A stretch of DNA of 64,000 bases from Mytilus trossulus (taxonomy: Eukaryota), in NCBI RefSeq assembly GCF_036588685.1, contig NC_086383.1, forward strand, positions 6,510,001 to 6,574,000. Reading direction: 5' to 3'. This document shows positions 1 to 49,034 of this stretch, piece after piece. Both the position numbers and the translations under genes were made by a program. The notes beneath the pieces were generated by a model. It made no database searches. It had not been told where the DNA came from and saw only the letters and a program-made list of their open reading frames with translations. How positions within the stretch are numbered: position 1 is the first letter of the stretch; each line of letters opens with the position of its first letter.

Positions 1-266
1 GTATATTAGTTTACTAAACAAATGTTTGACATCTTCAAAGATTATTGTAAAGATGATAGTATCTTACATGGCATGAAAATACGGATTTTTTGTGTTATTA
101 AAATTTGCTGTTACAAAATGATAGAAATTATTATAAATTAAGGAATGTATCTCCCTCGTGCAAAGCTCTGATTTCTTTCACGGATTTGGCTATACTTTTT
201 GGACCTTTTGGATTATAGCTCTTCATCTTTTATATAAGCTTTGGATTTCAAATATTTTGGCCACGA

Positions 267-310
267 GCATCACTGAAGAGACATGTATTGTCGAAATGCG
301 CATCTGGTGC
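267..310 (+). ncRNA. Minimal type I hammerhead ribozyme, copy 1 (predicted cleavage after C304)
   Basis: GCAUCA-CUGAAGA-GACA(uguau)UGUC-GAAA-U(GCGC)A-UC/UGGUGC: CUGANGA and GAAA core, 4-bp stem II, 2-bp stem III with palindromic loop, AUC triplet, 6-bp stem I GCAUCA:UGGUGC. Confidence 0.92.
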
Positions 311-617
311 AAGAAAATTAGTACCGTTAATTTTATTTACTACCACTGGGTCGATGCCTCTGCTGGTGGACTTTTAGTCCCCGAGGGTATCACCAGCCCA
401 GTAGCCAGTACTTCGGTACTGGCATGAAAATACGGATTTTTTGTGTTATTAAAATTTGCTCTTACAAAATGATAGAAATTATTATAAATTAAGGAATGTA
501 TCTCCCTCGTGCAAAGCTCTGATTTCTTTCACGGATTTGGCTATACTTTTTGGACCTTTTGGATTATAGCTCTTCATCTTTTAAATAAGCTTTGGATTTC
601 AAATATTTTGGCCTCGA

Positions 618-661
618 GCATCACTGAAGAGACATGTATTGTCGAAATGCGCATCTGGTGC
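618..661 (+). ncRNA. Minimal type I hammerhead ribozyme, copy 2 (cleavage after 655)
   Basis: Identical to 267-310. Confidence 0.92.
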
Positions 662-968
662 AAGAAAATTAGTACCGTTAATTTTATTTACTACCACTGG
701 GTCGATGCCTCTGCTGGTGGACTATTAGTCCCCGAGGGTATCACCAGCCCAGTAGCAAGTACTTCGGTACTGGCATGAAAATACGGATTTTTTGTGTTAT
801 TAAAATTTGCTGTTACAAAATGATAGAAATTATTATAAATTAAGGAATGTATCTCCCTCGTGCAAAGCTCTGATTTCTTTCACGGATTTGGCTATACTTT
901 TTGGACCTTTTGGATTATAGCTCTTCATCTTTTATATAAGCTTTGGATTTCAAATATTTTGGCCACGA

Positions 969-1012
969 GCATCACTGAAGAGACATGTATTGTCGAAATG
1001 CGCATCTGGTGC
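969..1012 (+). ncRNA. Minimal type I hammerhead ribozyme, copy 3 (cleavage after 1006)
   Basis: Identical to 267-310. Confidence 0.92.
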
Positions 1013-1319
1013 AAGAAAATTAGTACCGTTAATTTTATTTACTACCACTGGGTCGATGCCTCTGCTGGTGGACTATTAGTCCCCGAGGGTATCACCAGCC
1101 CAGTAGCCAGTACTTCGGTACTGGCATGAAAATACGGATTTTTTGTGTTATTAAAATTTGCTGTTACAAAATGATAGAAATTATTATAAATTAAGGAATG
1201 TATTTCCCTCGTGCAAAGCTCTGATTTCTTTCACGGATTTGGCTATACTTTTTGGACCTTTTGGATTATAGCTCTTCATCTTCAATATAAGCTTTGGATT
1301 TCAAATATTTTGGCCACGA

Positions 1320-1363
1320 GCATCACTGAAGAGACATGTATTGTCGAAATGCGCATCTGGTGC
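1320..1363 (+). ncRNA. Minimal type I hammerhead ribozyme, copy 4 (cleavage after 1357)
   Basis: Identical to 267-310. Confidence 0.92.
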
Positions 1364-2177
1364 AAGAAAATTAGTACCGTTAATTTTATTTACCTTTTCT
1401 TAACATTATCAAATTACTTTTTTTTGTCACTTTGGTTTACGATATAATGCGATTTCCAATGAGACAACTCTGTAATGTGTACTGTTTACTGCTGTACCCC
1501 TAATTTTGACAAATATATCAATCATGTATGTGTGTTTGTTTACAAATCGCTTTCAATTGAATGGAATTTAATGCGACTGTATTACAAGTAAGAAGTTATG
1601 CTTGCTATAAAGTTCAATCCACCATTTGCTAAATGAAAAACTATGTTGTCTTTACCAAGTCAGGGATATGACAGTTGTTATCCACTCATTTTATGTTTTT
1701 GAACTTTTGATTGTGCCATTTTATTAGGGACTTTCCGTTTTAAATTTTTCTTTGAGTTCAATATTTTCATGACATTGATTTATTTTTGGAAATGTTTAAC
1801 TAGTGATATTATCTTAATTTGTATCCTAATAAGTTTGATAATTGTAAATTGCTGAGTTTTATCAATGCAACTTCTTTTAATTTGTTCATAGTCCTGATCA
1901 CAGCTTTTATACTGCTCCTATTGAAAATTGTTTAAAATATGGATAGACTGAGTGCAGTACTTTTACAGCAGTAATCCGAAACAATTGTGTTTCCGTAGAC
2001 AACAAAATCATCATTAATTACATATTTGTCTAGTCTTCTAAATGTCAACTACTTTAGTCATTATTATACTATATTCGCAGGCAATAGAATTCTTGGCAAT
2101 GTTTTCACCACGGATTTCTCTATTAAAGTACAAGCTATTGAAAGGTTTGTCAAATACAAAATCTGGCAAGTTATATA

Positions 2178-2385
2178 CTGTGAATTCATTATTATTCGTT
2201 GGATATAAATTTTCGTGGATTTCGTGGGAACAGGTTAACCACGAAATTAAATGTTCATCGAATAGCAAATTTTCTATAGGCTGGTATGCAGATTTCACCA
2301 AAACCACGAAATTAAATATCCATGAACATGTAAGATTTCCTTAATCCACGAAAATTGGTACCCATGAAAATAAATGAATCCACAG
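2178..2385. mobile_element. MITE with terminal inverted repeats and TA flanks
   Basis: TA|CTGTGAATTCATT ... AATGAATCCACAG|TA; internal repeated ccacgaaa/tttcgtgg motifs in both orientations. Confidence 0.8.
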
Positions 2386-3574
2386 TAATGGTATTACATT
2401 TTAACATTGTATAAATCAGAACTGATAAACTTGATGAAGTAAAGTTTATTTAAAAAATATAAGAATACTTGGTATAATTGACAATTGAACAACACTCCAC
2501 GGGTTACCAAATGACACATAGAAGTTACAAAAATAGAAATCATTTAAGGCCATCAATGAGCAAAACGTCAGTGAATGGGTCCGAAATAACAAAATGTGTA
2601 ATATGTATATGGACTATAATTGTCTGATTTATAAACAAAGCAATAAAACAAAAAAACAAATAATTGAATCAGCAACAAATAACAACAGCTACATTAATGG
2701 CTCCTTACTTAGGACATGTATTAGTATATTGTTTTTAATTTCCGCCAGATTATGTTGCAAACATTTTTTTTTAAATATCAAGACTACGTAATGTCTGCAA
2801 GCTATCTGTGTGAATTCTCAATGCATAAAGGAATATCGAGACACGGAAATACCAGTCACCTATAAATGTTTGCAAGAAATCTACTTTGTGTTGCAACGTC
2901 AAACCTCATGTCTAGTTATTTTGTTCATTAGAACGTACTTTATATATCGTAATGGTTACTGATCCTACTCACCTAAACATGGAATTGAATATAGTTTAAG
3001 GTGCATATACGTCGGTTTATAAATGGGATTTAACTCGTGTAGGTACAATATAGAATATCTAAAGGGGTAGAACTAATAGTTCCTGCATACTATGCTCTAA
3101 AATATTGTGTTGATAACAAGTACATTAAGTATTAGATGCTCTAGGACACAAAGGGACCTCTGAAAGAATATGCAACACATCAAGAGAAGCGCTTATCATT
3201 AAGAGCTCTAGAAACCACAAATAAAGTATAAGGTCACCGAACCTTTGCCTAAAGACTATACAGCTCAAGAGGAATATAATTTATGAACACTTTGTAAGGT
3301 ATTTGTTTGCTTGTAATAGTATCAGATAAGGAAAATATGTTGTTTACACAAGCATTGCTATGTTTAGACGTCATAACAATGAAAGGTTGAAATTATAGTG
3401 TTGTGACACAATATAACTTCTTCGGAAAAACACTATCTTTTCACAACAACATTTGTTTAGTCTCTTTTTTCGGCCTAGATATGAGTATACTGAAGGCAAC
3501 TCCTTCAGTTAGGAAAATCGCCAATAACAAAAACATCTGTACGAGGTCAGAAACTTATGTTCAGTGGTTATGAA

Positions 3575-12071: not shown

Positions 12072-13163
12072 TTAAGGAATCCACGATTGTGGAGTTGTTG
12101 CTGTAGAGTTAGGGAGGGAGCATTTGTGATAACTTTGATAAACTTTACTTCTATATGTAAATAACATTTTGAGTTCTTTCCGGAAGTATGCACCTGTAAT
12201 ACTGTACAGGAAAAAGTTAATGCAATAATTCATAAAAAATATTGTCTTTGTAAAATTCAACAAGTTTTGATTTGTTGGTACGAATACACTATCCTCCATT
12301 CTCATCGAACTCATCTGTAGAAAATGTTTGAACCATATAATGGCATATGGCGTGTTGAAAGCGATGAAGCAAAATGATATAGTTATCAAAATAACGGTAA
12401 ATTCTAATCGAATTATACTTTCCTCTGTTATAATTTTGACCTGTCGGTGTCTTTTGTTCCGAATTATTAACTTCCGAATGATCAATGTATTTAGTATTGT
12501 TATAATTAGAAATGGCAGAAATGTGATACACACTCCAAAAATACAGTCATAGATAAATGACAGGTACGTGTGCTCCAATCGTCTGGTGCATGATGGGACA
12601 TCATTTGGACCAACATATCTCACTTCACTTAGCCATGGTCGGAATGAAGCTATCACAAATGAGGTTATAACCGCAAAGAAAACGATTCGTTTTGAAGAAC
12701 GTAGGTTACAGACGTCCTTGCGCTTTAACGGGTGACAAACTCCAACATATCGTTCTAATGTGAAACATGCTACAAGCCAAGCTGAAAGGAAACGGAAAGA
12801 ATACGACATGAACATTATTATCTGACATACTCCATTACTTTCCAAAAAAGGAGCTGTTACCTGTCCGGAACCGATTGGTATTCCTTTTCTAATCCACTCA
12901 ACAAGGACATAAAATATCAATGCCATGATATCAGCTGTTGATAGTGCTGCAAGATATACACTTGCAGATAACTTCCTCATGTTTTTAGTTAGAAACACTA
13001 ATAAGGAAATTGTATTCCCGGTAATTCCTACAGCAAATATCACTGGGGTGACATATGTGAATACATCTGATCCAATTGACCCCTGGCCTGAGATGTGATT
13101 ATTTGTCCACTGGTCATCACATGTTGACCCATTTCCACATGATAAATATTTGGATTGGTTTAT
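12072..13163 (-). CDS. Class A (rhodopsin-like) peptide GPCR, FMRFamide/sex-peptide-receptor-like; main coding exon with all 7 TM helices
   Basis: GITGN (TM1), LSTAD (TM2), C...FTLERYVGVCHP (TM3), CFIAFNTPY (TM6), NYCINFFLY (TM7), N-terminal N-glycosylation sites NQS/NGS. Splice acceptor ttttttatttcag|ATA at 13164/13163, phase 0; the first 16 aa of the ORF-track call are probably intronic. Confidence 0.93.
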   Translation of the reverse strand: MNQSKYLSCGNGSTCDDQWTNNHISGQGSIGSDVFTYVTPVIFAVGITGNTISLLVFLTKNMRKLSASVYLAALSTADIMALIFYVLVEWIRKGIPIGSGQVTAPFLESNGVCQIIMFMSYSFRFLSAWLVACFTLERYVGVCHPLKRKDVCNLRSSKRIVFFAVITSFVIASFRPWLSEVRYVGPNDVPSCTRRLEHTYLSFIYDCIFGVCITFLPFLIITILNTLIIRKLIIRNKRHRQVKIITEESIIRLEFTVILITISFCFIAFNTPYAIIWFKHFLQMSSMRMEDSVFVPTNQNLLNFTKTIFFMNYCINFFLYSITGAYFRKELKMLFTYRSKVYQSYHKCSLPNSTATTPQSWIP

Positions 13164-15567
13164 CTGAAATAAAAAAACATACATATTATTCTCATTACAT
13201 TTATAATACAAAGATGTGGTATGAATGCAAGTAAGACGATTTAAGCGATCAATCAGCGGTTATCAATCAGTCATGTTCGCGTCAAACTGACTTCAACAAT
13301 CCGTCAGACTTATAGTAAAAGTCATTGACTGATCAGACGGATCGGACTGATAGGACCGATCGACCTTTCTGACGGATTGAACTCTACAATCTTACATGAT
13401 AAACGAATAACAATTACGTGTTCGAAGTTTTGTTTTATTAAATAAAAATGGCGACATTTAAAGTACGAAACGTTCAAGTACAACTAATCAAGAACATCAG
13501 TTTTATTAAAATATTCAGCAAAGTTTAATGAATTTAAAAGGAAACATATACAGATTACACATTTATTTGACTATTAACCTAACATAACGGTCATTTTCGT
13601 TCTAATTTATGTTATAAATTTTCCAACCCTGACAGATCTAGAAAGGGTGTTTATTTATATTGCGAGTTTTGTTATTTTTCCGTAAACAAATCGAAAAATT
13701 AAGAAATGAGCAGTTTTGGCAACTGTTGGTGTATTATTGTTTAGTATTTTAAAGTTGTGTATCCTTATAATATTGAAATTCGTTAAAAATAAACAATCTA
13801 GGCCTTTTAAATAACAAATAAATAATAAAATTGCTGCATTACCTTTCAAAAGATAAGAAATATTTTAAAAATGTGAAGATTATTATAGCATATTTTTTTC
13901 TGATATTCTGTGGAAAAATGGAACATAACAAATGATAAACTATAAACATTATAATAATTCTGTGGCGGTTTATAATTTCCATTTAAGTAAGGAAAAAATT
14001 ACGTAAAACATTAACGCCTAAGGTTGAAAGTCCTGTATTATGCAGTGCATCTTAAAATCAGTACATCGTATAAACTGAGTAAAAAGTAACCTCACAAAAA
14101 TGCAGCACGCCAACAGATCAATTGAAAACGGAAATACGTCAAACGACGATTGGATAACATCTGTCATATTCCTGATGACATAAATTTTCTTATTTAGAAA
14201 ATTGTGGAATAAATCTTGTTTTATAGCTCGCTAAACCTCTCATTTGCATGACAATCGCGTAAAATTATTTTATATTGATAACGATGTGTGAACAAAACAT
14301 ACAGGACGAATATATTTAAAAATTTAAAAACTTGATAACAGTAGTCAGCATTATGTTTAAATCTTAATCACCACCAAATAACATTATAGTATTATCTTAT
14401 TGATAACGGGCTAGTAAGTTTGATTTATAGTGGTCGCAATGAATATTTGCTTCTATTTCTTACATAATTGTACATTTGTTTAACATGTTACCTATCGTTA
14501 TATAACACTGAATGCGTATATTAGTTTGACTTCAAAATCCATAAACCTGCGTGATGGTTAGTTGTTGTTAGTTAAAACACTCTGAAGGTATATAAAGCGC
14601 TGAATAAACTGTCCTAGTACTTAAAACAAGAAGAAGCCTCAACTATATGCACCTTCTAACTTAAGCGTTAAATCTCATTACCAAATATCATTATATCATC
14701 AAAAATTTATTATCAAAAATTGATTGGAATAAAAGGTGTAAGTTAAAACGCTAGGGGGAATTAATGCATTATTGGCAATAAATGTCAGGTTTCAAATATG
14801 AACTGAGATTTGTGGATAATTGCATTGCCTTTCGACACTTCTTCCCTTTTAGATTTAAAGGGAAACAGTCTATTCTAACAGTCTATTCTATTTTACACAC
14901 ATGATGCAATAAACTCGATGTAATTCAAAAACATGTACTTAGTAAGAGGTCATGCGTTCGATTTCCAAAACTGTTACGGAGTTTGTATGATTTTTAATAT
15001 TAACGATTGATTGATGAATTGATTGATTGATTGTTAATTACTTAACGATGCACGCATACCATAAGTTTCCTGTTCGGAGGTGACTTCGTACCATTATGCG
15101 TTTATGCAATTCAATCAGGTTGTATCTAAGCTTGCTATTCCAAACAAAACTATTCTTTATGTTTGGCAGTTTTGATGCAGATAACTCCTTGCATACAAAG
15201 TGTTAATACATCAAAAAGAAGTTGACAATAATTGTTTCATATAATCTATTTTTAATTGAAATCAGCAAAATCTCATTAATATATACATGTGTCTTGCTAC
15301 CTATTTATAATTATGAAATTGAAAGTACCCTCATGATTTTCAATACTGAGTGTAAACCAAATAAAACTAAAAAATATAATGCTATGATTTATGAAAAAGA
15401 ATTTTAAATAAATAACAAAGCAAAGCAAATATGATAAATAAAAAAATAGAAACAACGGAACCCCAGGCTTCTAACTTGGTAAATTTACAATGGTTTAGAT
15501 AGCATTAGCCTGATTATGTGTTTATAAGTTTTCACATACTTATTTATATTTGATTAGGAAACAAGTA

Positions 15568-26445: not shown

Positions 26446-29132
26446 TGAAGAGTTGTAGCAGAATTTGATGTTTTCACTAGTATGGATAACACGACGAATA
26501 CTTCATTTTTTAATGTATTGCCTAGTTCCATATGCCAATTTTAAGGACTGATGGTATAGAATATTCCATATATTTTCTGTCTATCGAAAGTTATAACTCT
26601 GATTTTTCATAGTTTAGTTAGTTTCCATAACTTCTCTTTTTTTATCACAAACAAGAATACTCGTTTACCATGGAATACAATTTGAGACAACAATATTAGT
26701 TAAATGTTGTTCAAATTTAATCCACAGCCTCTGTGTTAATAGATAAAAGGCTATAAATTCAATTTATTAAAGCCAATAACCTTAAAACATATGTAATACT
26801 CAGATCAATGATAAACAAGACGTGTTTCGTCTCGTATGAAGAAAAGATGTAATCAATATAACTATATATATAATGTACCTTCGCAAAAATCGACCTATGT
26901 TTAATTAAATGATGCATACAAATTATTCACTTCAAAGTTGTATTGTGTACGTATAAAATGCCTTTGTATATAGTATAAGCTCTATATTGTGTGTATTAAT
27001 AAAAAGATAATAATACATATTTTTTTTTATTTTTTAAGAGTAAATACGTTGCGTGCAAATTTTGTTTTTGTATTCTTTTTTTCATTTGTCTTTTCGCCTT
27101 TTTTTCAGATATCTCAAACATTGTTTTTGTGCTTAATTGGAAAGCAACAATTTCTCAAAAGGTTTAATCTGCTAAGGAACACAAAGACAGAGTATATTTA
27201 GTTTCATGTTCGGATATTACAACATTTTAGTAATCTGCCAGATTTTCGCACTAAGGGGCAGTAGAGTATTTGTTTCACTAAGCAACTTCGATGCGTTCTG
27301 TCTTTCAATTTAAAGGCTAAGCTTGCTATAAAACAACGTATAGTCCAACAATTTCTACATAAGAAAATACTTGTACTAAGATAGTTGTAATCCATTTGTG
27401 TGATGTGTTTCAGCTTTTGAATGTAGTATCCGTTTTTAAATTCCTTCTGACTGCTATTTTGGTAAGAAACATATCAGTAAAATGCAGTCGTAACGACTTT
27501 TAAAAATATTTGTATTGGAACAATTATACCCTTGCATTAGTAGAAAGTACAAACATTCATTAAGCTACATATCCTCCATTTTCTTTTTTCCCAATGATAA
27601 ATATGCAGTTTATTATACCTGATTGGTACCTCAGAATTAAAATTTAATTTACCAACACGCGAATGATTGAATTTTCAACTATGATTTTGCAGAAAGTAAA
27701 CAGTATTTTCCTTTTACATGCCCTTTTCGGATACAATTATAATTATATTTCTTCTAACATATTAGAAGGGTAAACGACTTGCATATGGATATGTTGGTTT
27801 GGAGTCAGGAATAGGCTAGTTGATTTTCAATCGGTTTGCGCTTTTTTTCTTATCATTTAATAAGGACTTACTGCTTTGAATTTTACGAAGGATTATGTTA
27901 TCAACAAACATTGAAATGGACAGACAGGAAACGAATATATAATCTAACACATTTACTGACTGGAGTTTATGTGATACTTTTATATGGATTAAAAACGTGG
28001 CAATATCTTTTTCTTCTAATTTTGCTGTAATAACACAACTTATTTGACATAGTATTTCGTTGGAAATATTGCATGTATTGGACTCAGTAAACTCTTGTCC
28101 CTTGAATTCAATAACGCAAACATATGACATAAGGATATGTCAAACAAACTATGTTGTTCATATCAAAATAAGTTAATAGTACTGCTCATACATGTATTGT
28201 TAGCAGTCAATGTTAGTTCAAGTACTCTCTAATTGACGTAGAAACCGCCATGACAAACATATGTTATCAAACACTCAATTCAAATGCAATCAGTTGGTGT
28301 CAATTCATAACAATATATATCACTGGCAAATCAGTCTTGCGTGAGAATCAACGAGTTCATGAACTACTTTATATTTATAATTAGCTTTTGCTTTGATCTT
28401 AGTATGTTCGAATTAATAAAGCTTACATACTCTTCTTTTGAAATTTTACATGAACATATGATCAAAAATTCATAGTTAAGTTTGTATATATACAAATGTC
28501 ATCAACACATTGATTGGTATTGTTGTGTAAATGGAATTGTTATCACATTACGTATTCGAGTAACCTATATTTTCATCCACATTTCTTCAATATTGAGTTC
28601 ATTTGTAATAACAATTTTATGTTGATGTTATATGTTTTATTCTCATCGGATTTTGTTTAATGCTTAGTCCGTTTCTGTGTGTGTTACATTTTAATGTTGT
28701 GTCGTTGTTTTCTTATATATAATGCGTATCCCACAGTTTTAGTATGTTACACCAATTTAGTTTTTGTCTATAGATTTACGAGTTTTGAACAGCGGTATAC
28801 TGTGTACTGATGCCTTTATTTTAATATTTCATTGATCGAAATTTGAAATGAACAGTCATCGCAATGGTCTAAATGATCTTTCCGCATGACAATACAAGTT
28901 GATAGAAATAACCGTGCAAATGTCAAATGAAGTGGATTTATCCTAATCAGCTTATAGACTGGGAATTGATATATTAACGATATCATTCAGATAGTAGAAT
29001 CTGTTTTTATGCGGTAAAGATATGAAATAAATTGCTATTGCACAATGGAGATTCAGTGACATGTTATTATTAATGACAAAAGAAAAATAACTTCTTTGGT
29101 ATTGCGTAGTTAATATTCTACCATTGTGTAAA

Positions 29133-29378
29133 TAGTTATCAAAAGTACCAGGATTATAATTTTATACGCCAGACGCGCTTTTCGTCTACATAAGACTCAT
29201 CAGTGACGCTCAGATCAAAAAAGTTAAAAAGCCAAACACATACAAAGTTGAAGAGCATTGAGGACCCAACATTCCAAAAAATTGTCCCAAATACGGCTAA
29301 GGTAATCTACTCCTGGGGTAAGAAAATCATTAGTTTTTGGAAAAATTCAAAGTTTTGTTAACAGAAAATTTATAAAAA
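29133..29378 (-). mobile_element. Hammerhead-bearing retrozyme fragment (second family) inserted in one duplicate only
   Basis: Absent from the paralogous site near 25030. Minus strand 29209-29166 reads GCGUCA-CUGAUGA-GUC(uuaugua)GAC-GAAA-A(GCGC)G-UC-UGGCGU, with one stem III mismatch; flanked by tgtaaa on both sides. Confidence 0.8.
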
Positions 29379-30067
29379 TGTAAAGCTTGTTGATGCTGAA
29401 GGCCCTTTTAACGTATCCTTAGCTTCAATTAAAAAGAGTGTTGTCCTATATTACTATATTTAAGTGTTTTCGCTATAGGTCATTGTATTTGATTTTGTTT
29501 AGAGCTATGGCACTTAATGTTAAACAGGGATACATACAAGGCGAATTTAACATGTTATACATTTAATTTGGTTAAAGCAAATATCTTAAAGGATAGCCTG
29601 GATCGTAGTTACAGACTTTATCAAACCACAATTAGTTTGGCTGAATTAACATTGTAATGTTCTAATTGCAACAATATGCAACTGAACTGAGGACAATACT
29701 TTCTAACACATTTTCAAATCTCATAAATAAAACTAGATTCCCTTCCTTCTAACGTGAATAGGTATGCTATTCATTGAAAGTTCTTTATAACTTTCTAGAT
29801 GAGACGTAACTGCTTTCATTAACACTTTTACAGAAAAGTTAAATCATGAGTAATTGGCCAAAATCATTCTACACACATGTATTGATAACTATGTTAAATG
29901 TACAAACGATGTGTCATACCAACGCAGGAATATACAATGTAATGTATTTAAAATAATAGTCATGAGGGTTGATAATGTCTTGTTAACTTTGGTAATGTTA
30001 TCTTGCTATCAAAATGAAAATATATTTTTTTTGTAATGTATATAATTATAAATTACGATTCTTTGAC

Positions 30068-30158
30068 AATAGTTATCAAAGGTACCAGGATTATAATTTC
30101 GTACGCCAGACGCGAGTTTTGTCTACAAAAAACTCACCAGTGAGGCTCATATCAAAAG
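30068..30158 (-). repeat. Degenerate fragment of second hammerhead family
   Basis: Matches 29131-29220 but the core is mutated (CUGGUGA, stem II disrupted, CAAAA in place of CGAAA). Confidence 0.7.
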
Positions 30159-34137: not shown

Positions 34138-34435
34138 GAAAGAGGGACGAAAGGTACAAAAGGGACAGTAAAACTCATACATCGAAAATAAACTGACAAC
34201 GTCATAGCTAAAAATGAAAAAGACAAACAGACAAACAATAGTACACATGACACAACATTGAAAACTACAGAATAAACAACACGAACCCAACCAAAACTTA
34301 GGGGTTAGCTCAGGTGCTCCGGAAGAGTAAGAATATACTGCTCCTCATGTGGCACCCGTCGTGTTGATTATTTGATAACAAATCCGATAAATAGTCTAAT
34401 TAACAGGTCACATTCATGACATGAAAGGGGATTGT
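34138..34435 (-). repeat. Copy of Penelope-like 3' UTR-derived repeat
   Basis: Reverse-complement match to 42530-42790 (ggtgctccggaag, tggcacccgtcgtgtt); another copy at ~52540-52715. Confidence 0.65.
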
Positions 34436-37400
34436 TGTTCAACATATCAAGTTACTGTCTTTATATTCAGCCTTTTGGTTTGTTATTAAAATAGTAACAT
34501 GAAAGCAACTATGTAGATATCGATCAATATATTTTTATAGATACAAATATCAAAATCCACATATCTTAACTAGCTCTTTTATTTATCTCATTGAACCGCA
34601 AATGTCACTAATTTTTTTATAGTATTCTTAATATCATCAACAAATAATTCAGATGTTTTAAAATTTTACTTCAAACTACTATTTTTTAAATTAAACTGTG
34701 TACATTGTAATATTATGTACCCTTTCCCAAATTATATCGATACTTAGTACCTTTGTATTAACCATTTTAAATATATGTTTCATCGGAATATAAAACTTTG
34801 TAAAATTGAGTGAACTTTTGTCGCTCAGATCAGAATGATCTTTCCACATGACATTACACATTAATAGAAATAACTGATCAAAAGTCACAAAAAATGGATT
34901 AATCATCATCATCGTATAGACAAGGAATTTGTATTCAATGATATCATTTAGATGAGGATTGCATAGACTGGTATATGCTTTAGATATATGACAACTATTG
35001 CTGCTGTACATTGTGGTATCATTTAACATATTGTCTGATTAATGAGGGAAAAAACAAATCTTCCTAAGTATCTTTATAATTAGGAAATAACATGCTTCCA
35101 ATTACAATGTTTAATTGCGGTACATAATGCTTAATATCTTTTAGCCTTTTGAAATAATACAGGTACTATATTATACAGTAATGCAACAATGTAGTCGATT
35201 ACGTATTGATAATCAAAATGATGTGAGTGTATTTGATCATGAATGCAGACCAGTAAATGGCCATTTGTAAACGTTTATACAAACAAACTCGTGTATGAGA
35301 AAACAAGTACAACAAATTATTATTGACGAAGAAACGAAAAATCACTCGGGTAACAGGTCCCTCAAAATGTTACATTTGATAGAGTGAATGAAAAATGTCC
35401 TGGAAATCAGCCTACTGTAAGAATATCGTATGATAAAAGACGTTTTCTGATTCAGTGTTTTTGTCTGTTTTTCAAATCTTCAAAAATAAAAATAAAACAG
35501 TCTTTTAGATAATTTGTTTTACGCATGTTAATAAGTTGATAACTTTCCAATGACATTTCATTTCCTGACAATAAAGTGAGGCGTATATAGTATTACCGCC
35601 CACGATAATTCTCACTGGTCGTGTTTTATGGTAATCGAATAAGTGAAAAAAATCGTAAAACTTTGAAATAGATCTTTTATAGCGTAATTTTATGCGCGGT
35701 GGTGCCGTAGGCCTAAGTCATTTTACTAATCCCTAAAAGTAATTACAAAGTCTGCAGGACATTCTTATATAAAATAGTCTCAGTACCATAGGTAAATCAA
35801 TTTTACTTATTACTTACAATAATAACATATGGCAACAAGGGATAATCACAAGCCGAATTAAAAATGTGATACATTAGTGTTTTTTGCAATTTTACATCTT
35901 ACACAATAGGTTAAGCAATAAAACATGTTTTGCTATCAAATATAACACGAGAAAACAACATAAGAAAAATATTGTTATCGCTTCAACTATTCCACATGCT
36001 TGAGTAAGTAGGATCAAAGACTATAAATTCAATCAATCAAAGCTAATTACGTTAAAACATATATACTTCTCAGATCAATGATCCACAAGACGTTTTACGT
36101 CTCCTATAAACATATAAACAAAAGAGTCAATCAATATGGGAAAAAAGTAATCAGCTTTCGCTTTTAACTTTATTTGTTAAGTTCAATTATAAACCTCATG
36201 TTTGATTTGTGTTTACCGGACATTCCGTTCAAGCTCAAATGTGTAATATTTAGACTAACTTACGCGTGTGAATGCGAATGCAGTTGATTTTTGATAAAAT
36301 AAAGAAAGAAATGCAATCATTTTGCTTACCCTCGAATTTTAACCTTACATGTAAAAACTTGTGTTGATGGAAAACAGATATGTACATTCAGGATACTGCG
36401 TAATCAGTGTGTTAAGAAATGTCCTTTTTGGAAGCAAATAGTGTCAAATGTGTAATGTCTAAAAAGTGGAATAAGAACCAAAATAATAACGTTATGTTTA
36501 CATTTGTTTGATGTGTTTTAAATTTCTTTTTTGCCATTTGATAAGCGACAAACCTTTTAGAATATTTCTCGAAGTTCAATATATTTTGTGATTTACATTT
36601 GATTTCTATTCCTTCGATTATCGTTAAAGGGTCATAAGTGAAAGGCTCTATCATTAATATAGCAAGCAAATCAAACCTGTATTGTGTTTTAAAACTTTAT
36701 GTACGTCAACCAGTAGTTTTGTTGTCGCAAATTAAGTCTACCTAACGACGCCTATATCAGAAAAAAAATCGTGATTGCTAATGTCAAATACATTTAGTTC
36801 AACTTTGAAATCTATTTCCATAGTGATTTCATACAGGAATAACTACCAATTTCAACTATTGCATATCATGCATTTAAACACTAATTATTCTTTTACTATA
36901 ATCATATCTTAAATATCAATAAATTAAGAGCTAAAGGGACACACATGTCTGATATAGCCAATAGTTTAGCAATGCTGTAATCTAAAATATCGAAATCGGG
37001 TAACACTCAATAAATAAACACAAACTTGTTAAACCGTATATAACTCAAAAATGGAGCCATACTTATTTTGTCAATCACAGTAACTGTTGTAAAAATGTTA
37101 TTTTAATTATGATGTGCACAATTGTGATCTTGACAAGTTCATTCCTTAAACATGAAGAGGGTTTAGAAATAACAATATAGATATTATGCAGACATTAAAT
37201 TTCAATCAGTTTAATTGAAGTCTTGAGTTGGCATGTCAATTAACTGCTAGTATTCTGTTGTTATTTATGTATTGTTGTCATTTTATTTATTTACTGTTGT
37301 TACATTTTTCGATATCGGACTCGGACTTCCTTTCAGCTGAATTTTAATTTGGGTATTGTTATGCGTTTACTTTTCTACATTGGCTAGATGTATAGGGGGA

Positions 37401-42394: not shown

Positions 42395-42789
42395 AGGAAG
42401 CTATTAAACCAAGAGTTCCAAATGGTGAAGTTGAAATCATCCCTTCGTAAATTTTACGGACGCCATCACGAGTTAGTTGACCGTTATGGAATAACCGTTT
42501 CACAAATGATATCGGATATGTTCCTTACAATCCCCTTCCCTTTCATGAATTTGACCTACCTACTTAAACTATTTACCGGATTTGTAATCACATAAGAAAC
42601 ACGACGGGTGCCGCATGTGGATCAGGATCTGCTTACCCTTCCGGAGCACCTGAGATCACCCCTAGTTTTTTGGTGGGGTTCGTGTTGTTTATTCTTTAGT
42701 TTTCTATGTTGTGTCATGTGTACTATTGTTTTTCTGTTTGTCTTTTTCATTTTTAGCCATGGCGTTGTCAGTTTGTTTGAGATTTATGA
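42395..42789 (+). mobile_element. 5'-truncated Penelope-like retroelement 3' end (RT C-terminus plus UTR)
   Basis: Frame from 42395 reads RKLLNQEFQMVKLKSSLRKFYGRHHELVDRYGITVSQMISDMF, which I recognise as resembling the C-terminal region of invertebrate Penelope-like RTs; the downstream part is repeated elsewhere in the window. Confidence 0.65.
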
Positions 42790-42896
42790 ACAGGCATACA
42801 TTACTTTAGTCGTATTTGGCACAACTTTTTGGAATCTTGGATCCTCAATGCTCTTCAATTTTTTACTTATTTGGCTTGATAACTATTTTGATATGA

Positions 42897-42940
42897 GCGT
42901 CACTGATGAGTCATATGTAGACGAAACGTGCGTCTGGCGT
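42897..42940 (+). ncRNA. Minimal type I hammerhead ribozyme, second family, intact core (cleavage after C42934)
   Basis: GCGUCA-CUGAUGA-GUC(auaugua)GAC-GAAA-C(GUGC)G-UC/UGGCGU within a retrozyme fragment at ~42790-42972. Confidence 0.85.
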
Positions 42941-43154
42941 ACTAAATTATAATATTTGTACCTTTGATAACTTTTACGGCTACGTTGAGGAAACATTTAT
43001 AGCCGTAGGGAAGGATGATGAATGAAATAATCGGTTAACGTACTCATTTGTCGTTTTTTAACCATACACATATTGTCGGCTTATTTCACCCTGTCAGGCA
43101 TATTAATCATTAAATCACAAGTAAATTCACATGTAAGAGGGAGATCAAACATCA

Positions 43155-43620: not shown

Positions 43621-44461
43621 ATATAAAACAGCACACTAATTGCTGTTCTAGTTTAGGGAAATCGGTAGAGGGAAAGTAGAATTATATAAGGGTTATTAGA
43701 TTAGTTTTTCGTTCACCGCTCTTGTATCTCGGTGTTTGTTTTTTGTTTAATGTCAGTGTTCTTGCTGTTCCGTTGATTTCTCCTTAGAGTTTATGTCCTT
43801 CTTGCGTTTTATGTTTGAAATCCGGATTCGTTTTTTCCCAATCAATATATTTCTTTTGAACAAGGTATAATACTGTTTTCTGTTTCAGGTTTCTAATAGT
43901 GTTCAGTTCTGCGTGTAGTTGTCTTGACTTTTTTTTACCTTTTTGTTACATGTGTCACTAATAAGTCTGTTTACAGGAACGTGTGTTTTTGATCAAAATC
44001 AAATGTCTGGTATCTATAATAAGGCTTGTTATCATAATCATTAGGTATCAACCACAACTTTTACTTGTTATCATGGTCAATATTTATTTAAAATATATAT
44101 ATATTATACATGTATGAACGATTAAGTCAAATTGCAGCAACATTATTTGTATTTGAGTGGGTTTACCTCACGGAATGATGTAACTGACCGAGAAAAATTG
44201 ATATTTTATAAAAAAAAAAAAAATGCTATCAATTACTCGTATGTTGGCTTGTTTTAAATAACACTAGAAAACAATTTTGCGGGGCATATACCGCTTGTAA
44301 CTGTTGTAGGATGAATTGTAAAATATATTATGACTGGCGAATTTTATATAAGGTATCAAAAGCCCTCTCCCATTTTTGCCAAAGTCCGTTATGTGATTTT
44401 TCTCTGTTAAATCCGATTATTTTTCAGTTTTTGGTGTTATACCAAAAGTATTCTTCCCCTT

Positions 44462-44740
44462 GCTGACATGAATTGTCATTGATATAGTTATATTTATCAA
44501 TTTACTGTTTACAATTTTTTTAATTTTTTGAAATACTTAGGCTTTTCTACCTCAGGCATAGATTACCTTATCTGTGTTTGGCAAAACTTTTAGGAATTTT
44601 GGTTCTCAATGCTCTTCAACTTTGTACTTTAGTTTTAGTTTTTATTTTTTGTATTCGAGCGTAATTGATGAGTCTTTTGTAGACGAAACGCGCATCTGGC
44701 GTATACTTAATTTAGTCCTGGTATCTATAATGAGTTTATT
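44462..44740 (+). repeat. Degenerate second-family retrozyme copy, hammerhead core mutated
   Basis: gagcgtaaTTGATGAgtcttttgtagacGAAAcgcgcatctggcgt at ~44657-44702: C3 changed to U, mismatches in stems I and III. Confidence 0.75.
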
Positions 44741-45082
44741 TGCTACAATGCACTTTTTGGCAAAAGTCAAATTAAATTAAAGATTTGCACCGCTTCAAAC
44801 ATGAAATAAATGAAACTGCTTAAAGACCATTTTTATTTAAAAAGTGAGCTTCTATGACCATTCATCAGTAATTTTCCTTCTGAGAGCCCTATTAGCATGT
44901 CAATGATAGGATTTGAATCTCGTATAAATGACAAAGGCTCATTTAAGGGGTCGCATGAGGGGGCAATATCCCGAATTCCCGGACTTACAAACACGAAATC
45001 CCGAAGTGTGTATTTTAACGAAATCCATATCCCGACATCCCAAAATTAAAACAAAACTACTTTCACTTTAAACAATATATGT

Positions 45083-46065: not shown

Positions 46066-47073
46066 TCAAGCATTAATAACTGCAGAAGCAAAGTCTGTAT
46101 TGCCAATATCATTAAATTCTCTGTTATAAAACTTATAAAATGTATTAGCACATGTCCAATTAGCTGTTGCCATAATGTCTTTCACAGAACATCCAGAAGC
46201 TAACGCAGCTGAAGTAGAGGCACCTCTAAATGAATGTGCCTTGAAAATGTTAATATCTATGCCCACTAAAAGTAACACGGTTTTTAACCATCTAGATAAC
46301 GTAGAAGTAGAAACTTTACGAAAAGTTGCATAAGAAATGAATAAACTAGAAGTCTTCCTGACATCTCTTGTACGTAAAACATAATTAATCAATGTCTTCA
46401 CCACGCAAAGTTCTGGTTTAACAAAACGCTTAAACACCACATTAGGCAGACTAAAACCAGGTCTAGTAGTTTTCAAAAGTTCCTGTATATGTAACACTAT
46501 AATCCCTTGTCTTTGACTAAAAGACATAAAATTTAAATCTAGTGCTGATATAGATTGTGCTCTAGCAGCTGTGGTCAAAGCAACTAAAGCTACAAGTTTA
46601 AAAGTCAAATTTTTCAATGTTAAATCCTCCAAAGGATATAAAGAACTCAAGAACGAAAGTACTAAATTTACATCCCAAGTGAAAGAGTATCTTGCTCTTG
46701 GCGGATTCAGGTTAAAGCAACCTTTCAACATACGTTCAACAAAAACAAATTTAGTAACCTCTACTCCAAAAAAGGATAAAGTCTGTGTCAACATTGACCG
46801 AGTAGTATTTAACACTGAATATGAAAAGTTACTGTTTTTCAAAAAATTTAAATAATCTATTACATCCTTTTCAGATGGTCGAAAATAATTGGTTTTCCTT
46901 TGAACACACCAAATAACGAATTTTCTCCAAGAATATTGGTATTGCTTGATTGTAGAAGGTCTCCAAGATGCAATGATGACATCTGCAGATGATTCTGAAA
47001 ATCCTCTATCAAGTAACGATTTCCGGATACAATACACACGGTTAAACTTAGTCTCTTCCTTAATGGATGGCAT
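46066..47073 (-). CDS. DIRS tyrosine recombinase (335 aa)
   Basis: N-terminal core-binding region (WRPSTIKQY...W) and catalytic residues AAR, LKT, HSFR, ANW, FYKFY; overlaps the end of pol. Confidence 0.95.
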   Translation of the reverse strand: MPSIKEETKFNRVYCIRKSLLDRGFSESSADVIIASWRPSTIKQYQYSWRKFVIWCVQRKTNYFRPSEKDVIDYLNFLKNSNFSYSVLNTTRSMLTQTLSFFGVEVTKFVFVERMLKGCFNLNPPRARYSFTWDVNLVLSFLSSLYPLEDLTLKNLTFKLVALVALTTAARAQSISALDLNFMSFSQRQGIIVLHIQELLKTTRPGFSLPNVVFKRFVKPELCVVKTLINYVLRTRDVRKTSSLFISYATFRKVSTSTLSRWLKTVLLLVGIDINIFKAHSFRGASTSAALASGCSVKDIMATANWTCANTFYKFYNREFNDIGNTDFASAVINA

Positions 47074-49034
47074 TCTCCTGTATGCGGCATCATTACTAAA
47101 TCTTTGTGTTGAGGCAGTCTAACTGGCAAAGAAATTAACATTGGTATTAGTAAAGAAAACCAACTTTGTGCAGGCCAAAATGGAATAATCAAAATAGCCT
47201 TCTCAACCTTGTCACTTAAAATTTTCATTAAAATTTTCCCCAACAAAGTAAAAGGTGGGAAAATATATGGTCTAAAATTAGACCATGAAATAGTAAAAGC
47301 ATCAACATAAGTAGCTTGTGGGTCAAATGACCATGATGCAAATCTAGGGACCTGAAAATTCAAACGTGAAGCAAACAAATCAACGTTTGGAACAAAGAAA
47401 TGTTTACAAATTCTATCAAATATTTCTACTTTCAATTGCCACTCTGTGGAATCTGTAAAATTTCTAGACATATGATCAGCATCAAAATTTTCTATTCCAG
47501 GAATATACTGAGCTGTGATAAAAATATCTCTTTCTGAACACCAAGCCCAAATCTCTGCAGCAAGCCTGTCAAGTGACAATGAGGCCATGCCTCCCATTTC
47601 ATTAATATAAGCTACTGCAGTAGTATTGTCTGATCGTATACCAATATGGCATGACTTTTTGTGACTAAAAAATGCTCTTAAAGAGAAAAATATAGCCAAC
47701 AATTCTAAGAAGTTTATATGAAAAGAGCGTTCTGACAAGCTCCATCTACCACCAGCAAATTGTCCTTCAAAATTAGTTCCCCAACCTTCTAATGAAGCGT
47801 CTGTTTCAATCCAAAAGTTAATTTGTATGGGTCTTATCAGTTTTCCATTCTCAGATCTTAAATTGTTAACCCACCAAAAGATTTCAGTTCTTGACTCTTG
47901 TGTGATAAAAATTTTTGAGTCAAAATCACCATGACAACTATTCAGTGCTCCCACTTTATTTCTCTCCATGTTTCTGTAATGAAGTGGTCCCACAGATACT
48001 GCATTAAAAGCATGTACCACAAGACCAATAAATGATGCAAAGCATCTTACAGTAACACACTTCTGTTGAAGAATAGTTTTCCCAAGGGAGATAATTTTAT
48101 TCAATTTCTCATCTGTCAGAAAAATCTTAAATAACTCAGTATCAATAATGAGACCAAAGAAAACAATGCGTTTTGAAGGAATAAGGACAGACTTCTTAGT
48201 ATTAATTCTGAAACCAAGTTCATCAAACTTCTGCACCATTTTTTCTGTATTTACAATACAACTTTCTAAATTCTGATCCATAACAAGAGAATCATCAATG
48301 TAATAAATACATCTAATGCCATTTTTCCGAAAAAATGCATAAACAGGTTTTAAAACCTTAGTAAAAACTCTTGGTGCAGAAGCCAATCCAAAACAAAGAA
48401 CCTGAAATTCATATAAATGTCCTTTCCACATGAAACGCAAATATCTCTTAAAGTCATTATTTATACTTATACTAAAATAAGCATCTGTGAGATCTATGGA
48501 TGTTAGATAATCATCCTTCTGAATTACATCTAAAACAAATGATAAATGTTCTTGTTTAAAATGATGATAAGCCACAAAATTGTTTAAATATTTTAAATTG
48601 ATAACAGGCCTTGAAGACCCATCTTTCTTAGGAACTAAGAAAATATTGGAAATAAACTGGTTCTCCAATGATTCAACTTTTTTAATAGCTCCCTTAGCCA
48701 ATAATTTTTGGACTTCTTCTGAAATAATTTCAATCTTGTGAACAGGGAAATGTATTTCATGCATAAAAGATGAAGCTTGTGGCTCAACATCAAATTCAAT
48801 TTTATAACCATTTCTAACTGTATCTAATATCCATAGATCACTTGTAATACTTTCCCATACGGGATAATTAAGTTCTCTCACCTTAACTATTGTCGATAAT
48901 GGTTGTTCTGGTTGAACCCTCTCTGAGAGTTGTGACCTCTTTGGGACCCTCTGTTCCCTGTCTGGAAACCTCTCCCTCTGCCTCTGAGGGAGGGGAATTG
49001 TCGTCCGCCCTGTCGACCGACAGGGCCTCTGGAG
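46860..49034 (-). CDS. DIRS pol: reverse transcriptase, RNase H and Dam-like adenine methyltransferase domain; no ATG at its start, frame open up to 49055
   Basis: RPVINLK, DLTDAYF, FGLASAPRVF, YIDD (RT); TDASLEGWG, HINFLEL, SDNTTAV, ADHMSR (RNase H); DLFAS...DAF...YIFPPF (MT). The ORF-track start at 48881 is GTG. Confidence 0.93.
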   Translation of the reverse strand, partial: LQRPCRSTGRTTIPLPQRQRERFPDREQRVPKRSQLSERVQPEQPLSTIVKVRELNYPVWESITSDLWILDTVRNGYKIEFDVEPQASSFMHEIHFPVHKIEIISEEVQKLLAKGAIKKVESLENQFISNIFLVPKKDGSSRPVINLKYLNNFVAYHHFKQEHLSFVLDVIQKDDYLTSIDLTDAYFSISINNDFKRYLRFMWKGHLYEFQVLCFGLASAPRVFTKVLKPVYAFFRKNGIRCIYYIDDSLVMDQNLESCIVNTEKMVQKFDELGFRINTKKSVLIPSKRIVFFGLIIDTELFKIFLTDEKLNKIISLGKTILQQKCVTVRCFASFIGLVVHAFNAVSVGPLHYRNMERNKVGALNSCHGDFDSKIFITQESRTEIFWWVNNLRSENGKLIRPIQINFWIETDASLEGWGTNFEGQFAGGRWSLSERSFHINFLELLAIFFSLRAFFSHKKSCHIGIRSDNTTAVAYINEMGGMASLSLDRLAAEIWAWCSERDIFITAQYIPGIENFDADHMSRNFTDSTEWQLKVEIFDRICKHFFVPNVDLFASRLNFQVPRFASWSFDPQATYVDAFTISWSNFRPYIFPPFTLLGKILMKILSDKVEKAILIIPFWPAQSWFSLLIPMLISLPVRLPQHKDLVMMPHTGECHPLRKRLSLTVCIVSGNRYLIEDFQNHLQMSSLHLGDLLQSSNTNILGENSLFGVFKGKPIIFDHLKRM

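What the first reader, a model, noticed from the sequence alone, without database searches (positions are those of the whole stretch)
69..1393. The 351-bp 'satellite' is a tandem hammerhead-ribozyme (retrozyme) array predicted to release 351-nt monomers/circRNAs
Seen: four identical minimal type I hammerheads at 351-nt spacing, all with intact CUGAAGA/GAAA core, full stems I and II and an AUC site; the few inter-unit substitutions fall outside the ribozyme. Stem III is only 2 bp around a palindrome (AUGCGCAU), the form known to cleave as a dimer, which tandem copies would allow. Inference: a plus-strand transcript self-cleaves after 304, 655, 1006 and 1357, giving three unit-length RNAs that can be circularised and re-inserted as multimers by rolling reverse transcription; the non-integer copy number (3.8) fits this. 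Non-LTR retrozymes of this kind are an established class reported in mussels and other metazoans, so the class is not new, though this locus may be unannotated.
Basis: partly seen in the sequence, partly recalled or inferred. Interest (0 to 1): 0.9.

Follow-up and report, generated by a model that had tools for sequence, protein, structure and literature searches.

The report
Mussel hammerhead retrozyme array, Penelope-mobilised
This is a young 3.8-unit copy of an abundant mussel "retrozyme", a non-coding mobile repeat with one self-cleaving hammerhead ribozyme per 351-bp unit; the kind is already known, but its ends point to a Penelope-like retrotransposon in the same genome as the element that copies it.

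Summary
Window 69-1393 is a 351-bp tandem array (3.8 copies, 98% matches) with four identical type I hammerheads. They score 31.2 bits on Rfam Hammerhead_1, just under the cut-off of 34, and predict cleavage after C304, C655, C1006 and C1357.

It belongs to the published mussel non-LTR retrozymes. It shares a roughly 70-nt structured block with the cloned M. galloprovincialis Mg353 element. This hammerhead type has 7,363 genomic copies and is abundant in RNA-seq, while the unique flank has no reads.

New here:
- Of 21 arrays of this family, 17 end at the same unit phase, 33-37 nt after the cleavage site; an 18th does so by eye.
- Their 5' ends are scattered.
- The related 354-357-bp family follows the same rule.
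- The shared end lies just upstream of the conserved block.
- The same block sits just upstream of the 1000-aa ORF of a young, abundant Penelope-like element. That ORF has an N-terminal GIY-YIG nuclease and a C-terminal reverse transcriptase (Naiad-type).
- That element's own truncated copies end at the same spot.

This fits the internal initiation of reverse transcription shown for a Penelope-like element in 2024.

Not shown: transcription, cleavage or circles from this locus, and circular versus multimeric template.

Earlier notes of this scan reached a similar reading on other DNA of this genome.

The parts
69..1393 (+). Whole retrozyme array: a 5'-truncated unit, three full units measured cleavage site to cleavage site, and a 36-nt 3' tail
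   Evidence: TRF; blastn of the unit
69..304 (+). 5'-truncated first unit (unit coordinates u116-351, where u1 is the first base after the cleavage site)
   Evidence: 5' ends of other arrays are scattered
267..310 (+). Hammerhead 1, predicted cleavage after C304
   Evidence: Rfam RF00163, 31.2 bits, model 1-45
618..661 (+). Hammerhead 2, predicted cleavage after C655
   Evidence: identical motif at +351
969..1012 (+). Hammerhead 3, predicted cleavage after C1006
   Evidence: identical motif
1320..1363 (+). Hammerhead 4, predicted cleavage after C1357
   Evidence: identical motif
341..404 (+). Conserved structured block, copy 1 (branched hairpin). It is shared with the other retrozyme families and with the Penelope-like element; proposed RT recruitment/initiation signal
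692..755 (+). Conserved block, copy 2
1043..1106 (+). Conserved block, copy 3
405..422 (+). GC-rich hairpin with a UUCG tetraloop following the block (also at 756-773 and 1107-1124). The commoner family keeps it through two compensatory pair changes
   Evidence: MFE fold; unit alignment
1358..1393 (+). 36-nt 3' tail ending in TTTATTTAC: the start of a fifth unit cut off directly before the block. Inferred site where reverse transcription began
   Evidence: 17 of 21 arrays (an 18th by eye) end at u33-37 (P about 5e-24)

Best explanation
The array is one insertion of a non-autonomous, non-coding retroelement of the mussel non-LTR retrozyme class.

Shown:
- Each 351-bp unit encodes a canonical type I hammerhead. 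All three of its helices are kept by compensatory changes against the sister family.
- The family is dispersed on many contigs, has thousands of copies, and is present in RNA.
- Arrays and solo copies of this family and the 354-357-bp family end at one fixed phase, 36 or about 44 nt after the cleavage site and directly before a conserved structured block of about 70 nt. Their 5' ends vary.
- The same block lies just upstream of the ORF of a young, very abundant Penelope-like element of Naiad architecture (N-terminal GIY-YIG nuclease, C-terminal RT, about 1000 aa, tandem period 3,370 bp).
- That element's own 5'-truncated copies end at the same position before the block.

Inferred:
- The Penelope-like protein binds the block in retrozyme RNA and primes cDNA synthesis on nicked target DNA from the UUUAC just 5' of the block. 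This is the internal initiation shown in vitro for the Anolis element PAc.
- It then copies across the hammerhead site for several rounds and stops at a variable point, here after 3.8 units.
- Because the cDNA starts 36 nt downstream of the cleavage site and runs across it, the template was either a religated circle or an uncleaved multimer, never a linear cleaved monomer.
- The hammerhead's benefit would be to turn a short transcript into a circle, an endless tandem that always carries both the start site and the block.
For: Hammerhead:
- Rfam alignment.
- On alignment A1, 12 pairs are 95.9% paired against 13-45% for slid controls, with 4 pairs changed on both sides and the core invariant.
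- Two copies cofold into a double hammerhead at -27.3 kcal/mol, against -7.8 for the best monomer fold and -3.7 for the canonical monomer fold.

Class:
- The block matches the Mg353 clone.
- The unit is about 72% identical over its whole length to the 357-bp family.
- Unit GC is 0.38 and there is no long ORF.

Dispersal:
- 248 matches were scored of 2,490 first-look candidates, on many contigs.
- The hammerhead has 7,363 copies; the commoner type has 18,232.

Ends:
- 17 of 21 arrays end at u33-37 (an 18th by eye), while 5' ends are scattered.
- 27 of 31 terminal copies of the commoner family end 38-46 nt after cleavage.
- One array interrupts the RT domain of a LINE ORF, so it was inserted there.
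- One array abuts an inverted 5'-truncated copy, as described for Penelope-like elements (PMC8557442).

Partner element:
- L054 reads [RT C-terminus, stop][3'UTR ending ...CTCTTTTATTAC][block][ATG, GIY-YIG ORF].
- The nuclease and RT parts lie in the same 1000-aa frame.
- 12 of 13 complete 3' ends of this element stop within CTCTTT(TATTAC).
- The junction carrying the block is found at 40 or more places at 98-99% identity.
- The block structure is 94.8% paired, and one pair appears as GC, UA, AU and GU.

RNA:
- Summed over both read directions, unit depth is about 200-720x in a 6% sample of each of two runs; the unique flank has 0.
- There are 151 and 115 unit-to-unit junction reads, biased towards plus-strand RNA.

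Mechanism precedent: PMC11167929.
Against: - No read of the two RNA runs crosses 1393|1394, and unit-specific variants of this locus are in only about 1-2% of reads. This locus is therefore not shown to be transcribed.
- No pile-up of molecule ends at the cleavage site, so in vivo cleavage is not visible in these libraries.
- About as many reads leave the unit at u33-36 into unrelated sequence as continue into the next unit. Part of the signal is therefore read-through of terminal or solo copies.
- The RNA runs carry a different species label (organism A) from the best DNA holders (organism B).
- Similarity between retrozyme and Penelope-like element is limited to about 70 nt plus the TTTAC-type end.
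- Target-site duplications are short and only weakly above a permuted control: mean 5.4 against 4.7 nt.
- Flanks are no more AT-rich than the window.
- Binding of the block by the protein is inferred, not tested.
Confidence: 0.8

Rival explanations
1. The hammerhead and circles play no part in insertion. The Penelope-like enzyme copies uncleaved multimeric transcripts of existing arrays, and the ribozyme serves another purpose or merely hitch-hikes.
For: [quoted passage not shown] Here too no ends pile up at 1357|1358, and many reads run from terminal units into flanks. The partner element itself has no canonical hammerhead between its stop codon and the block (PMC8557442).
Against: All three hammerhead helices are kept by compensatory changes, and the ribozyme has no column with 5% or more minor alleles among 111 units. 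Northern blots show abundant circles of mussel retrozymes (PMC7229834). Unit-to-unit junction reads are about 2.5-4 times commoner, relative to flank-joined reads, than a rough count of genomic copies predicts.
Confidence: 0.35
2. The array grew in place. A single short insertion, or a terminal fragment of a Penelope-like element, was expanded to 3.8 units by unequal crossing-over or replication slippage, as for satellite DNA (the model favoured in bioRxiv 10.64898/2026.07.22.740005).
For: Some arrays of the family show higher-order periodicity that only local duplication explains (L045, L057 and L062). Within-array identity (0.971) is only slightly above between-array identity (0.962).
Against: Local growth does not explain why independent arrays and sub-unit solo copies of two families share one 3' phase while 5' phases vary. 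This array has no higher-order pattern, and its units differ only by unit-specific single changes from the family consensus.
Confidence: 0.2
3. A dead satellite: the hammerhead-like motif is a relic without activity and the RNA is background transcription or DNA carry-over.
For: The Rfam score is below the gathering cut-off. The canonical monomer fold is weak, -3.7 kcal/mol. Depth per genomic copy is low, roughly 500x spread over 7,363 copies.
Against: Strand bias of up to 5:1 in one run. Four compensatory pair changes with an intact core. 100 of the roughly 125 copies of this family's hammerhead found in the sampled loci are identical. The cloned sister element self-cleaves in vitro (PMC7229834). 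Units diverge only about 0.8% from the consensus.
Confidence: 0.05

Closest known systems
Non-LTR retrozymes of Mytilus galloprovincialis (Cervera & de la Pena 2020, PMC7229834; genomic clone Mg353)
   Same: Tandem units of about 350 bp, low GC, non-coding, one type I hammerhead per unit with a short palindromic helix III. The same conserved block follows the ribozyme, and the RNA is abundant.
   Different: The hammerhead differs at core position 7 (A for U) and by compensatory changes in all three helices. The tail is 36 nt, against 43-44 nt in the commoner family here (the Mg353-type tail looked longer still, by eye). I could not check whether this variant is one of the paper's two consensus types, because the figure is not held. 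The paper does not describe the fixed 3' end.
Penelope-like elements: internal initiation and 'tail' (Frangieh et al. 2024, PMC11167929); Naiad clade (Craig et al. 2021, PMC8557442)
   Same: Fixed 3' end downstream of the hammerhead site, a 30-40-nt tail, strong 5' truncation, tandem and occasional inverted arrangement, and a required RNA element lying 3' of the start site.
   Different: The retrozyme has no ORF. The partner found here is Naiad-type, a clade reported to lack canonical hammerheads, so the ribozyme is not inherited from this partner's own repeat. The start site lies upstream of the ORF rather than inside it.
SINE-LINE partnerships that share a 3' tail
   Same: A short non-coding element borrows the RT of an autonomous element through a shared cis sequence of about 70 nt, with 5' truncation of copies.
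   Different: The shared element lies 3' of the initiation site and is copied only in later rounds. That works only on tandem or circular templates.
Newt satellite 2 and Schistosoma Sm-alpha hammerhead repeats
   Same: Type I hammerhead in tandem repeats of about 330 bp. Helix III is too short for efficient monomer cleavage, so a double hammerhead forms.
   Different: Different sequence families and hosts. No comparison of ends was made here.
Plant LTR retrozymes
   Same: Non-autonomous elements with hammerhead-processed circular RNA intermediates.
   Different: They have type III hammerheads, LTRs, a primer-binding site, a polypurine tract and 4-bp duplications, and are mobilised by Gypsy-type elements. 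None of these is present here.

Membership tests
Hammerhead ribozyme type I (Rfam RF00163) | Conserved core CUGANGA ... GAAA ... UH with helices I, II and III in type I topology | tested here: met
   Full-model alignment 1-45; sequence read directly; pairs counted
Hammerhead ribozyme type I (Rfam RF00163) | Score at or above the curated gathering cut-off (34 bits) | tested here: not met
   31.2 bits. The commoner type in the same genome reaches 40.9 bits. The shortfall comes from this family's variant helices, not from the core
Hammerhead ribozyme type I (Rfam RF00163) | Site-specific self-cleavage | not testable with these tools
   Needs in vitro transcription. RNA-seq shows no ends at 1357|1358
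Animal non-LTR retrozyme (PMC7229834) | Short tandem repeats of 150-450 bp with one type I hammerhead each, GC below 45-50%, no LTR/PBS/PPT, no coding capacity | tested here: met
   Period 351; GC 0.38 and longest open frame 96 aa in a trimer; no terminal repeats other than the units
Animal non-LTR retrozyme (PMC7229834) | Sequence homology to a published mussel retrozyme | tested here: met
   The block is shared with Mg353, compared by eye with the printed sequence. About 72% identity over the whole length to the 357-bp family
Animal non-LTR retrozyme (PMC7229834) | Expressed as unit-length circular RNA | tested here: inconclusive
   Strand-biased RNA with unit-to-unit junctions. A tandem transcript gives the same junction, and nothing is specific to this locus
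Non-autonomous partner of a Penelope-like element | Fixed 3' end with tail, variable 5' truncation | tested here: met
Non-autonomous partner of a Penelope-like element | Cis element shared with an autonomous element of the same genome at the corresponding position | tested here: met
   The block is 80-89% identical. Both kinds of copy end directly before it. Architecture of the partner ORF:
Non-autonomous partner of a Penelope-like element | Mobilisation by that element's protein | not testable with these tools
   Needs a reconstituted or cellular assay
Non-autonomous partner of a Penelope-like element | AT-rich target preference and target-site duplication | tested here: inconclusive
   Flank AT 0.69, equal to the window. 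Longest shared flank word 5.4 against 4.7 nt in the permuted control

The most novel reading that the evidence does not exclude
Hammerhead retrozymes of mussels parasitise a Naiad-type Penelope-like element, a clade that itself lacks hammerheads. They do so through a shared structured RNA block of about 70 nt that marks where reverse transcription starts. The ribozyme's job is to make a circle, which supplies the 'more than one unit' template that internal initiation needs. That would name the long-sought RT of animal retrozymes, give the hammerhead a reason to exist, and offer a compact 351-nt substrate for studying Penelope-like internal initiation.
Probability: 0.5. Interest if true: 0.65.

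Novelty: new member of a known kind. Interest (0 to 1): 0.42.

Why it matters
Retrozymes make some of the most abundant small circular RNAs in invertebrates, yet which enzyme copies them back into DNA, and how, is still open. The only direct argument so far is phylogenetic and comes from frogs (a 2026 preprint that says invertebrates were not examined). The boundary rule found here, together with the shared block in an apparently active element with intact 1000-aa ORFs, turns that question into a direct experiment in mussels. There is also a practical point: Rfam's cut-off misses all 7,363 or more hammerheads of this family, so standard annotation will label these arrays as plain satellite DNA.

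Tried and rejected
- The Rfam gathering scan of the whole window and the E-value scan of 1-1800 did not report the hammerhead. It appeared only when 81 nt were searched.
- ARAGORN found no tRNA-like gene in 1-3000, so the block is not a recognisable tRNA-derived SINE head.
- I looked for a Penelope-like ORF next to 30 high-scoring hammerhead loci. There was none, and two long ORFs gave no relevant Pfam hit.
- The window's own large ORFs are a DIRS-like element and a GPCR, not a Penelope-like element.
Later searches therefore returned coordinates only.
- The target-site duplication test was weak.
- The AT-rich target test was negative.
- The circular fold of the monomer is only modestly more stable than shuffles (z = -1.65, mononucleotide shuffles), and its MFE does not contain helix I of the hammerhead.
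- A pol III terminator as the cause of the fixed end was considered and dropped. Copies run past the T4 run, and the commoner family has no T4 run at the end.
Full report
**1. What is there**

Window 69-1393 is a single tandem array of period 351: 3.8 copies, 98% matches, no indels. Each unit contains the same 44-nt segment, at 267-310 and then every 351 nt. It reads as a type I hammerhead:
- helix I of 6 bp;
- core CUGAAGA;
- helix II of 4 bp closed by a 5-nt loop;
- core GAAA;
- helix III of 2 bp around the palindrome AUGCGCAU;
- cleavage triplet AUC.

Rfam Hammerhead_1 aligns over its entire model at 31.2 bits (E 1e-6 for the 81 nt searched). That is under the curated 34 bits. Scans of the whole window and of 1-1800 did not list it. 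In the terms of PMC4209133 this is the canonical metazoan type I architecture, not the 'minimal' variant.

**2. Is the ribozyme under selection?**

The genome is 1.30 Gb. It holds 7,363 copies of this 42-nt motif within 2 mismatches; the reversed control gives 0. It also holds 18,232 copies of a second type, CUGAYGAGUC...GACGAAACGCGCGUC.

I aligned 45 distinct hammerheads of both types taken from the window and the fetched loci (A1):
- The core is invariant.
- The 12 base pairs are formed in 95.9% of cells, against 13-45% when the partners are slid.
- Four pairs differ on both sides between the two types: one in helix I, two in helix II and one in helix III.

These are few evolutionary events, but they fall in every helix.

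Within the family, 111 full units show no ribozyme column with 5% or more minor alleles; the other 307 columns have 23 such columns.

Two 44-nt copies cofold into the classical double hammerhead, with an 8-bp intermolecular helix III, at -27.3 kcal/mol. A single copy prefers a non-hammerhead fold (-7.8) over the canonical one (-3.7).

**3. Which family**

Cervera and de la Pena 2020 (PMC7229834) describe, in M. galloprovincialis:
- repeats of 350-390 bp, each with a type I hammerhead;
- about 5,000 copies;
- in vitro self-cleavage of a cloned copy;
- abundant circular RNA on northern blots;
- RtcB-mediated circularisation.

The sequence of their genomic clone Mg353, printed in the supplement, carries the same conserved stretch after the ribozyme as this unit. 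The unit also aligns over its whole length, at about 72% identity, with a 357-bp unit of the commoner family. The stretch after the tail is about 90% identical. The unit has GC 0.38 and no meaningful ORF.

The array is therefore a member of the published class. It is a sister family whose hammerhead I could not match to the paper's two consensus types, because the figure is not held.

**4. RNA**

I laid two raw RNA-seq runs on window:1043-1800, which is one permuted unit plus 407 nt of unique flank. The runs carry the label organism A; the best DNA holders are labelled organism B.
- Summed over both read directions, unit depth was about 200-720x in a 6% sample of each run. The flank 1407-1640 had depth 0.
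- The commoner read direction exceeded the other by 3-5:1 in one run and by 1-2:1 in the other. If the library is of the usual stranded type, this means mainly plus-strand, ribozyme-sense RNA.
- Reads continuing from the unit end into the unit start were frequent: 151 and 115 for the main joint.
- No excess of molecule ends was listed at 1357|1358.
- Nearly as many reads leave the unit at about u33-36 into heterogeneous sequence.
- This unit's private variants occur in only 1-2% of reads.

The family is expressed. This locus is not shown to be, and circles cannot be told from multimers with these data.

**5. The ends of the arrays**

I number the unit from the first base after the cleavage site (u1). 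This array then runs from u116 to u36.

I fetched 20 further loci and mapped the array limits.
- Of 21 arrays, 17 end at u33-37, always in ...GTACCGTTAATTTTATTTA(C). An 18th does so by eye. The probability under uniform phases is about 5e-24.
- The 5' ends lie at u1, 3, 14, 21, 23, 26, 29, 34, 41, 44, 74, 84, 90, 108, 116, 160, 162, 185, 189 and 300.
- The commoner family obeys the same rule: 27 of 31 terminal or solo copies end 38-46 nt after the cleavage site, in ...GATAACTATTTAC.
- By eye, two copies of the Mg353 type also end at the homologous point.

In every family the end lies directly before the conserved block, so the last unit never includes it.

A fixed 3' end with variable 5' truncation is the signature of target-primed reverse transcription. 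It is not the signature of satellite growth. Further support:
- One array interrupts the RVT_1 domain of a LINE ORF (L044).
- Sub-unit solo copies are common, including three in this window.
- One array abuts an inverted 5'-truncated copy (L055).

Because synthesis starts 36 nt downstream of the cleavage site and crosses it, the template cannot have been a cleaved linear monomer.

Target-site duplications are short at best: the longest shared flank word averages 5.4 nt against 4.7 nt for permuted pairs. It is often TTAC-like, which overlaps the element's own end. The flanks are not more AT-rich than the window.

**6. The partner element**

In locus L054, 1.5 kb downstream of a retrozyme array, a copy of the block (88.6% identical) lies in a different context. 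The order there is:
1. the C-terminal part of an ORF;
2. a stop codon;
3. a 3'UTR ending ...CTCTTTTATTAC;
4. the block;
5. about 90 nt of further sequence;
6. an ATG opening an ORF whose N-terminal part is a GIY-YIG nuclease.

Evidence for the two domains:
- Nuclease: Pfam gives only 15 bits, E 0.027. The language-model neighbours are GIY-YIG clusters at 0.90. The motif is visible in the translation.
- RT: the upstream ORF part has a weak RVT_1 hit and RT clusters as neighbours at 0.96.

Genome searches with both parts place them in the same 1000-aa open frame, nuclease first, in tandem copies 3,370 bp apart. Many copies are 96-98% identical and uninterrupted. First-look candidates number 53,975 for the 3' part against 4,561 for the 5' part, which indicates heavy 5' truncation.

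This is the Naiad architecture of Craig et al. 2021 (PMC8557442). That clade is said to dominate bivalve genomes and to lack canonical hammerheads. I saw none between the stop codon and the block.

Two further points tie the block to this element:
- 12 of the 13 complete 3' fragments of the element in my loci stop within CTCTTT(TATTAC), directly before the point where the block begins in L054. Two of these lie in this window.
- The full junction with the block recurs at 40 or more scored places at 98-99% identity, including upstream of intact ORFs.

The block folds into a branched hairpin that is 94.8% paired across 25 diverse copies, against 34-52% for slid controls. The loop-closing pair occurs as GC, UA, AU and GU. 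In the Penelope-like copy, one pair is CG changed to UA. One caveat applies: the structure was derived from one of these sequences.

**7. Mechanism**

Frangieh et al. 2024 (PMC11167929) worked with a purified Penelope-like protein from Anolis. They showed that:
- cDNA synthesis starts at internal sites of the RNA, downstream of the hammerhead cut;
- it needs RNA lying 3' of the start;
- this explains the 30-40-nt 'tail' of genomic copies;
- hammerhead cleavage is dispensable in vitro;
- no RNA-seq reads end at the cut site.

The mussel data reproduce that pattern in genomic form, both for a Naiad-type element and for its presumed parasites.

My reading is as follows. The protein recognises the block, starts at the UUUAC just 5' of it, and copies round a circle or along a multimer. 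It stops preferentially within or after the structured block and the ribozyme junction: 16 of 21 5' ends fall in u1-116, P about 6e-5. The first step is inferred from shared position and structure. The last is an observation with an inferred cause.

A circle made by the hammerhead and a host ligase would always contain both the start site and the block. That gives the ribozyme a plausible selective value for a 351-nt element. An uncleaved multimer would serve equally well and cannot be excluded.

**8. This array in particular**

Its three full units differ from the family consensus by 4, 1 and 3 private substitutions and share none. The units were therefore identical when the array formed, and the array is young (about 0.8% divergence). 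It shows no higher-order pattern. Some other arrays do, so local duplication also acts in the family.

**9. Comparison and novelty**

The class, and its presence in mussels, are published. The link between retrozymes and Penelope-like elements has been argued from co-occurrence and from phylogeny of terminal repeats in Xenopus. That preprint states that invertebrates were not examined. It favours local amplification and does not mention tails or initiation sites.

As far as the held literature shows, the following are new:
- the fixed 3' phase of retrozyme arrays;
- the shared block;
- the identification of a Naiad-type partner.

Two earlier notes of this scan, on other DNA of the same genome, reached a similar reading for other families. 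A first-stage note on this window (42395-42972) is confirmed in passing.

**10. Limits**

- Only 21 arrays and 31 terminal copies were sampled. They were chosen from the best search hits.
- Copy numbers are lower bounds.
- No DNA of intact partner copies could be fetched.
- The comparison with Mg353 was made by eye against the printed sequence.
- Nothing here tests catalysis, circularity or protein binding.

Noticed in passing
window 42395-42977 (+): 42395-42789 is the 3' end of the Naiad-type Penelope-like element (94.6% identical to L054). It is cut about 40 nt before its usual end and joined directly to a 5'-truncated unit of the commoner retrozyme family (42790-42934) plus its 44-nt tail (42935-42977). 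This agrees with the first-stage note s1-827551.
   Followed up: partly
window 29126-29380 (-) and 30068-30108 (-): A solo 5'-truncated retrozyme unit of the commoner family with an intact-looking hammerhead and a 46-nt tail. About 700 bp away lies an isolated 41-nt piece that matches only the tail.
   Followed up: partly
window 44461-44750 (+): Another solo retrozyme fragment (79% identical to the commoner family). Its tail resembles that of the published Mg353 clone and ends at the homologous point before the block.
   Followed up: partly
window 34139-34439 (-) and 52541-52712 (-): Two 5'-truncated 3' ends of the Penelope-like element, both stopping in CTCTTT(TA), the element's normal terminus.
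   Followed up: yes
window 53921-54088 (-): A retrozyme-like fragment spanning tail plus block plus about 60 nt, without a hammerhead. It crosses the usual 3' end, so it is an internal piece of something longer. Its origin was not resolved.
   Followed up: no
window 46066-50398 (-): Three adjoining ORFs (503, 673 and 335 aa) with RVT_1 and a weak tyrosine-recombinase match: a DIRS-like retroelement.
   Followed up: partly
window 12072-13211 (-): An uninterrupted 379-aa ORF with a rhodopsin-family 7TM domain (Pfam E 1e-23): probably an intronless GPCR gene.
   Followed up: no
window 1641-1770: A short stretch in the array's 3' flank is covered by RNA reads from both directions (about 25-40x summed over both directions) with loose ends on both sides. 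It is another dispersed repeat; its identity was not determined.
   Followed up: no
L044:19-5248 (G000:C10:22762500-22769500): A 4.65-unit array of the same retrozyme family sits inside the RT domain of a LINE-like ORF with an APE nuclease match, with no obvious duplication of the target. It is a good locus for defining the insertion site if an intact LINE copy is aligned.
   Followed up: partly
genome-wide: Rfam's gathering score (34 bits) excludes this hammerhead family (31.2 bits), although it has 7,363 or more copies. Hammerheads of the commoner family reach up to 40.9 bits.
   Followed up: yes
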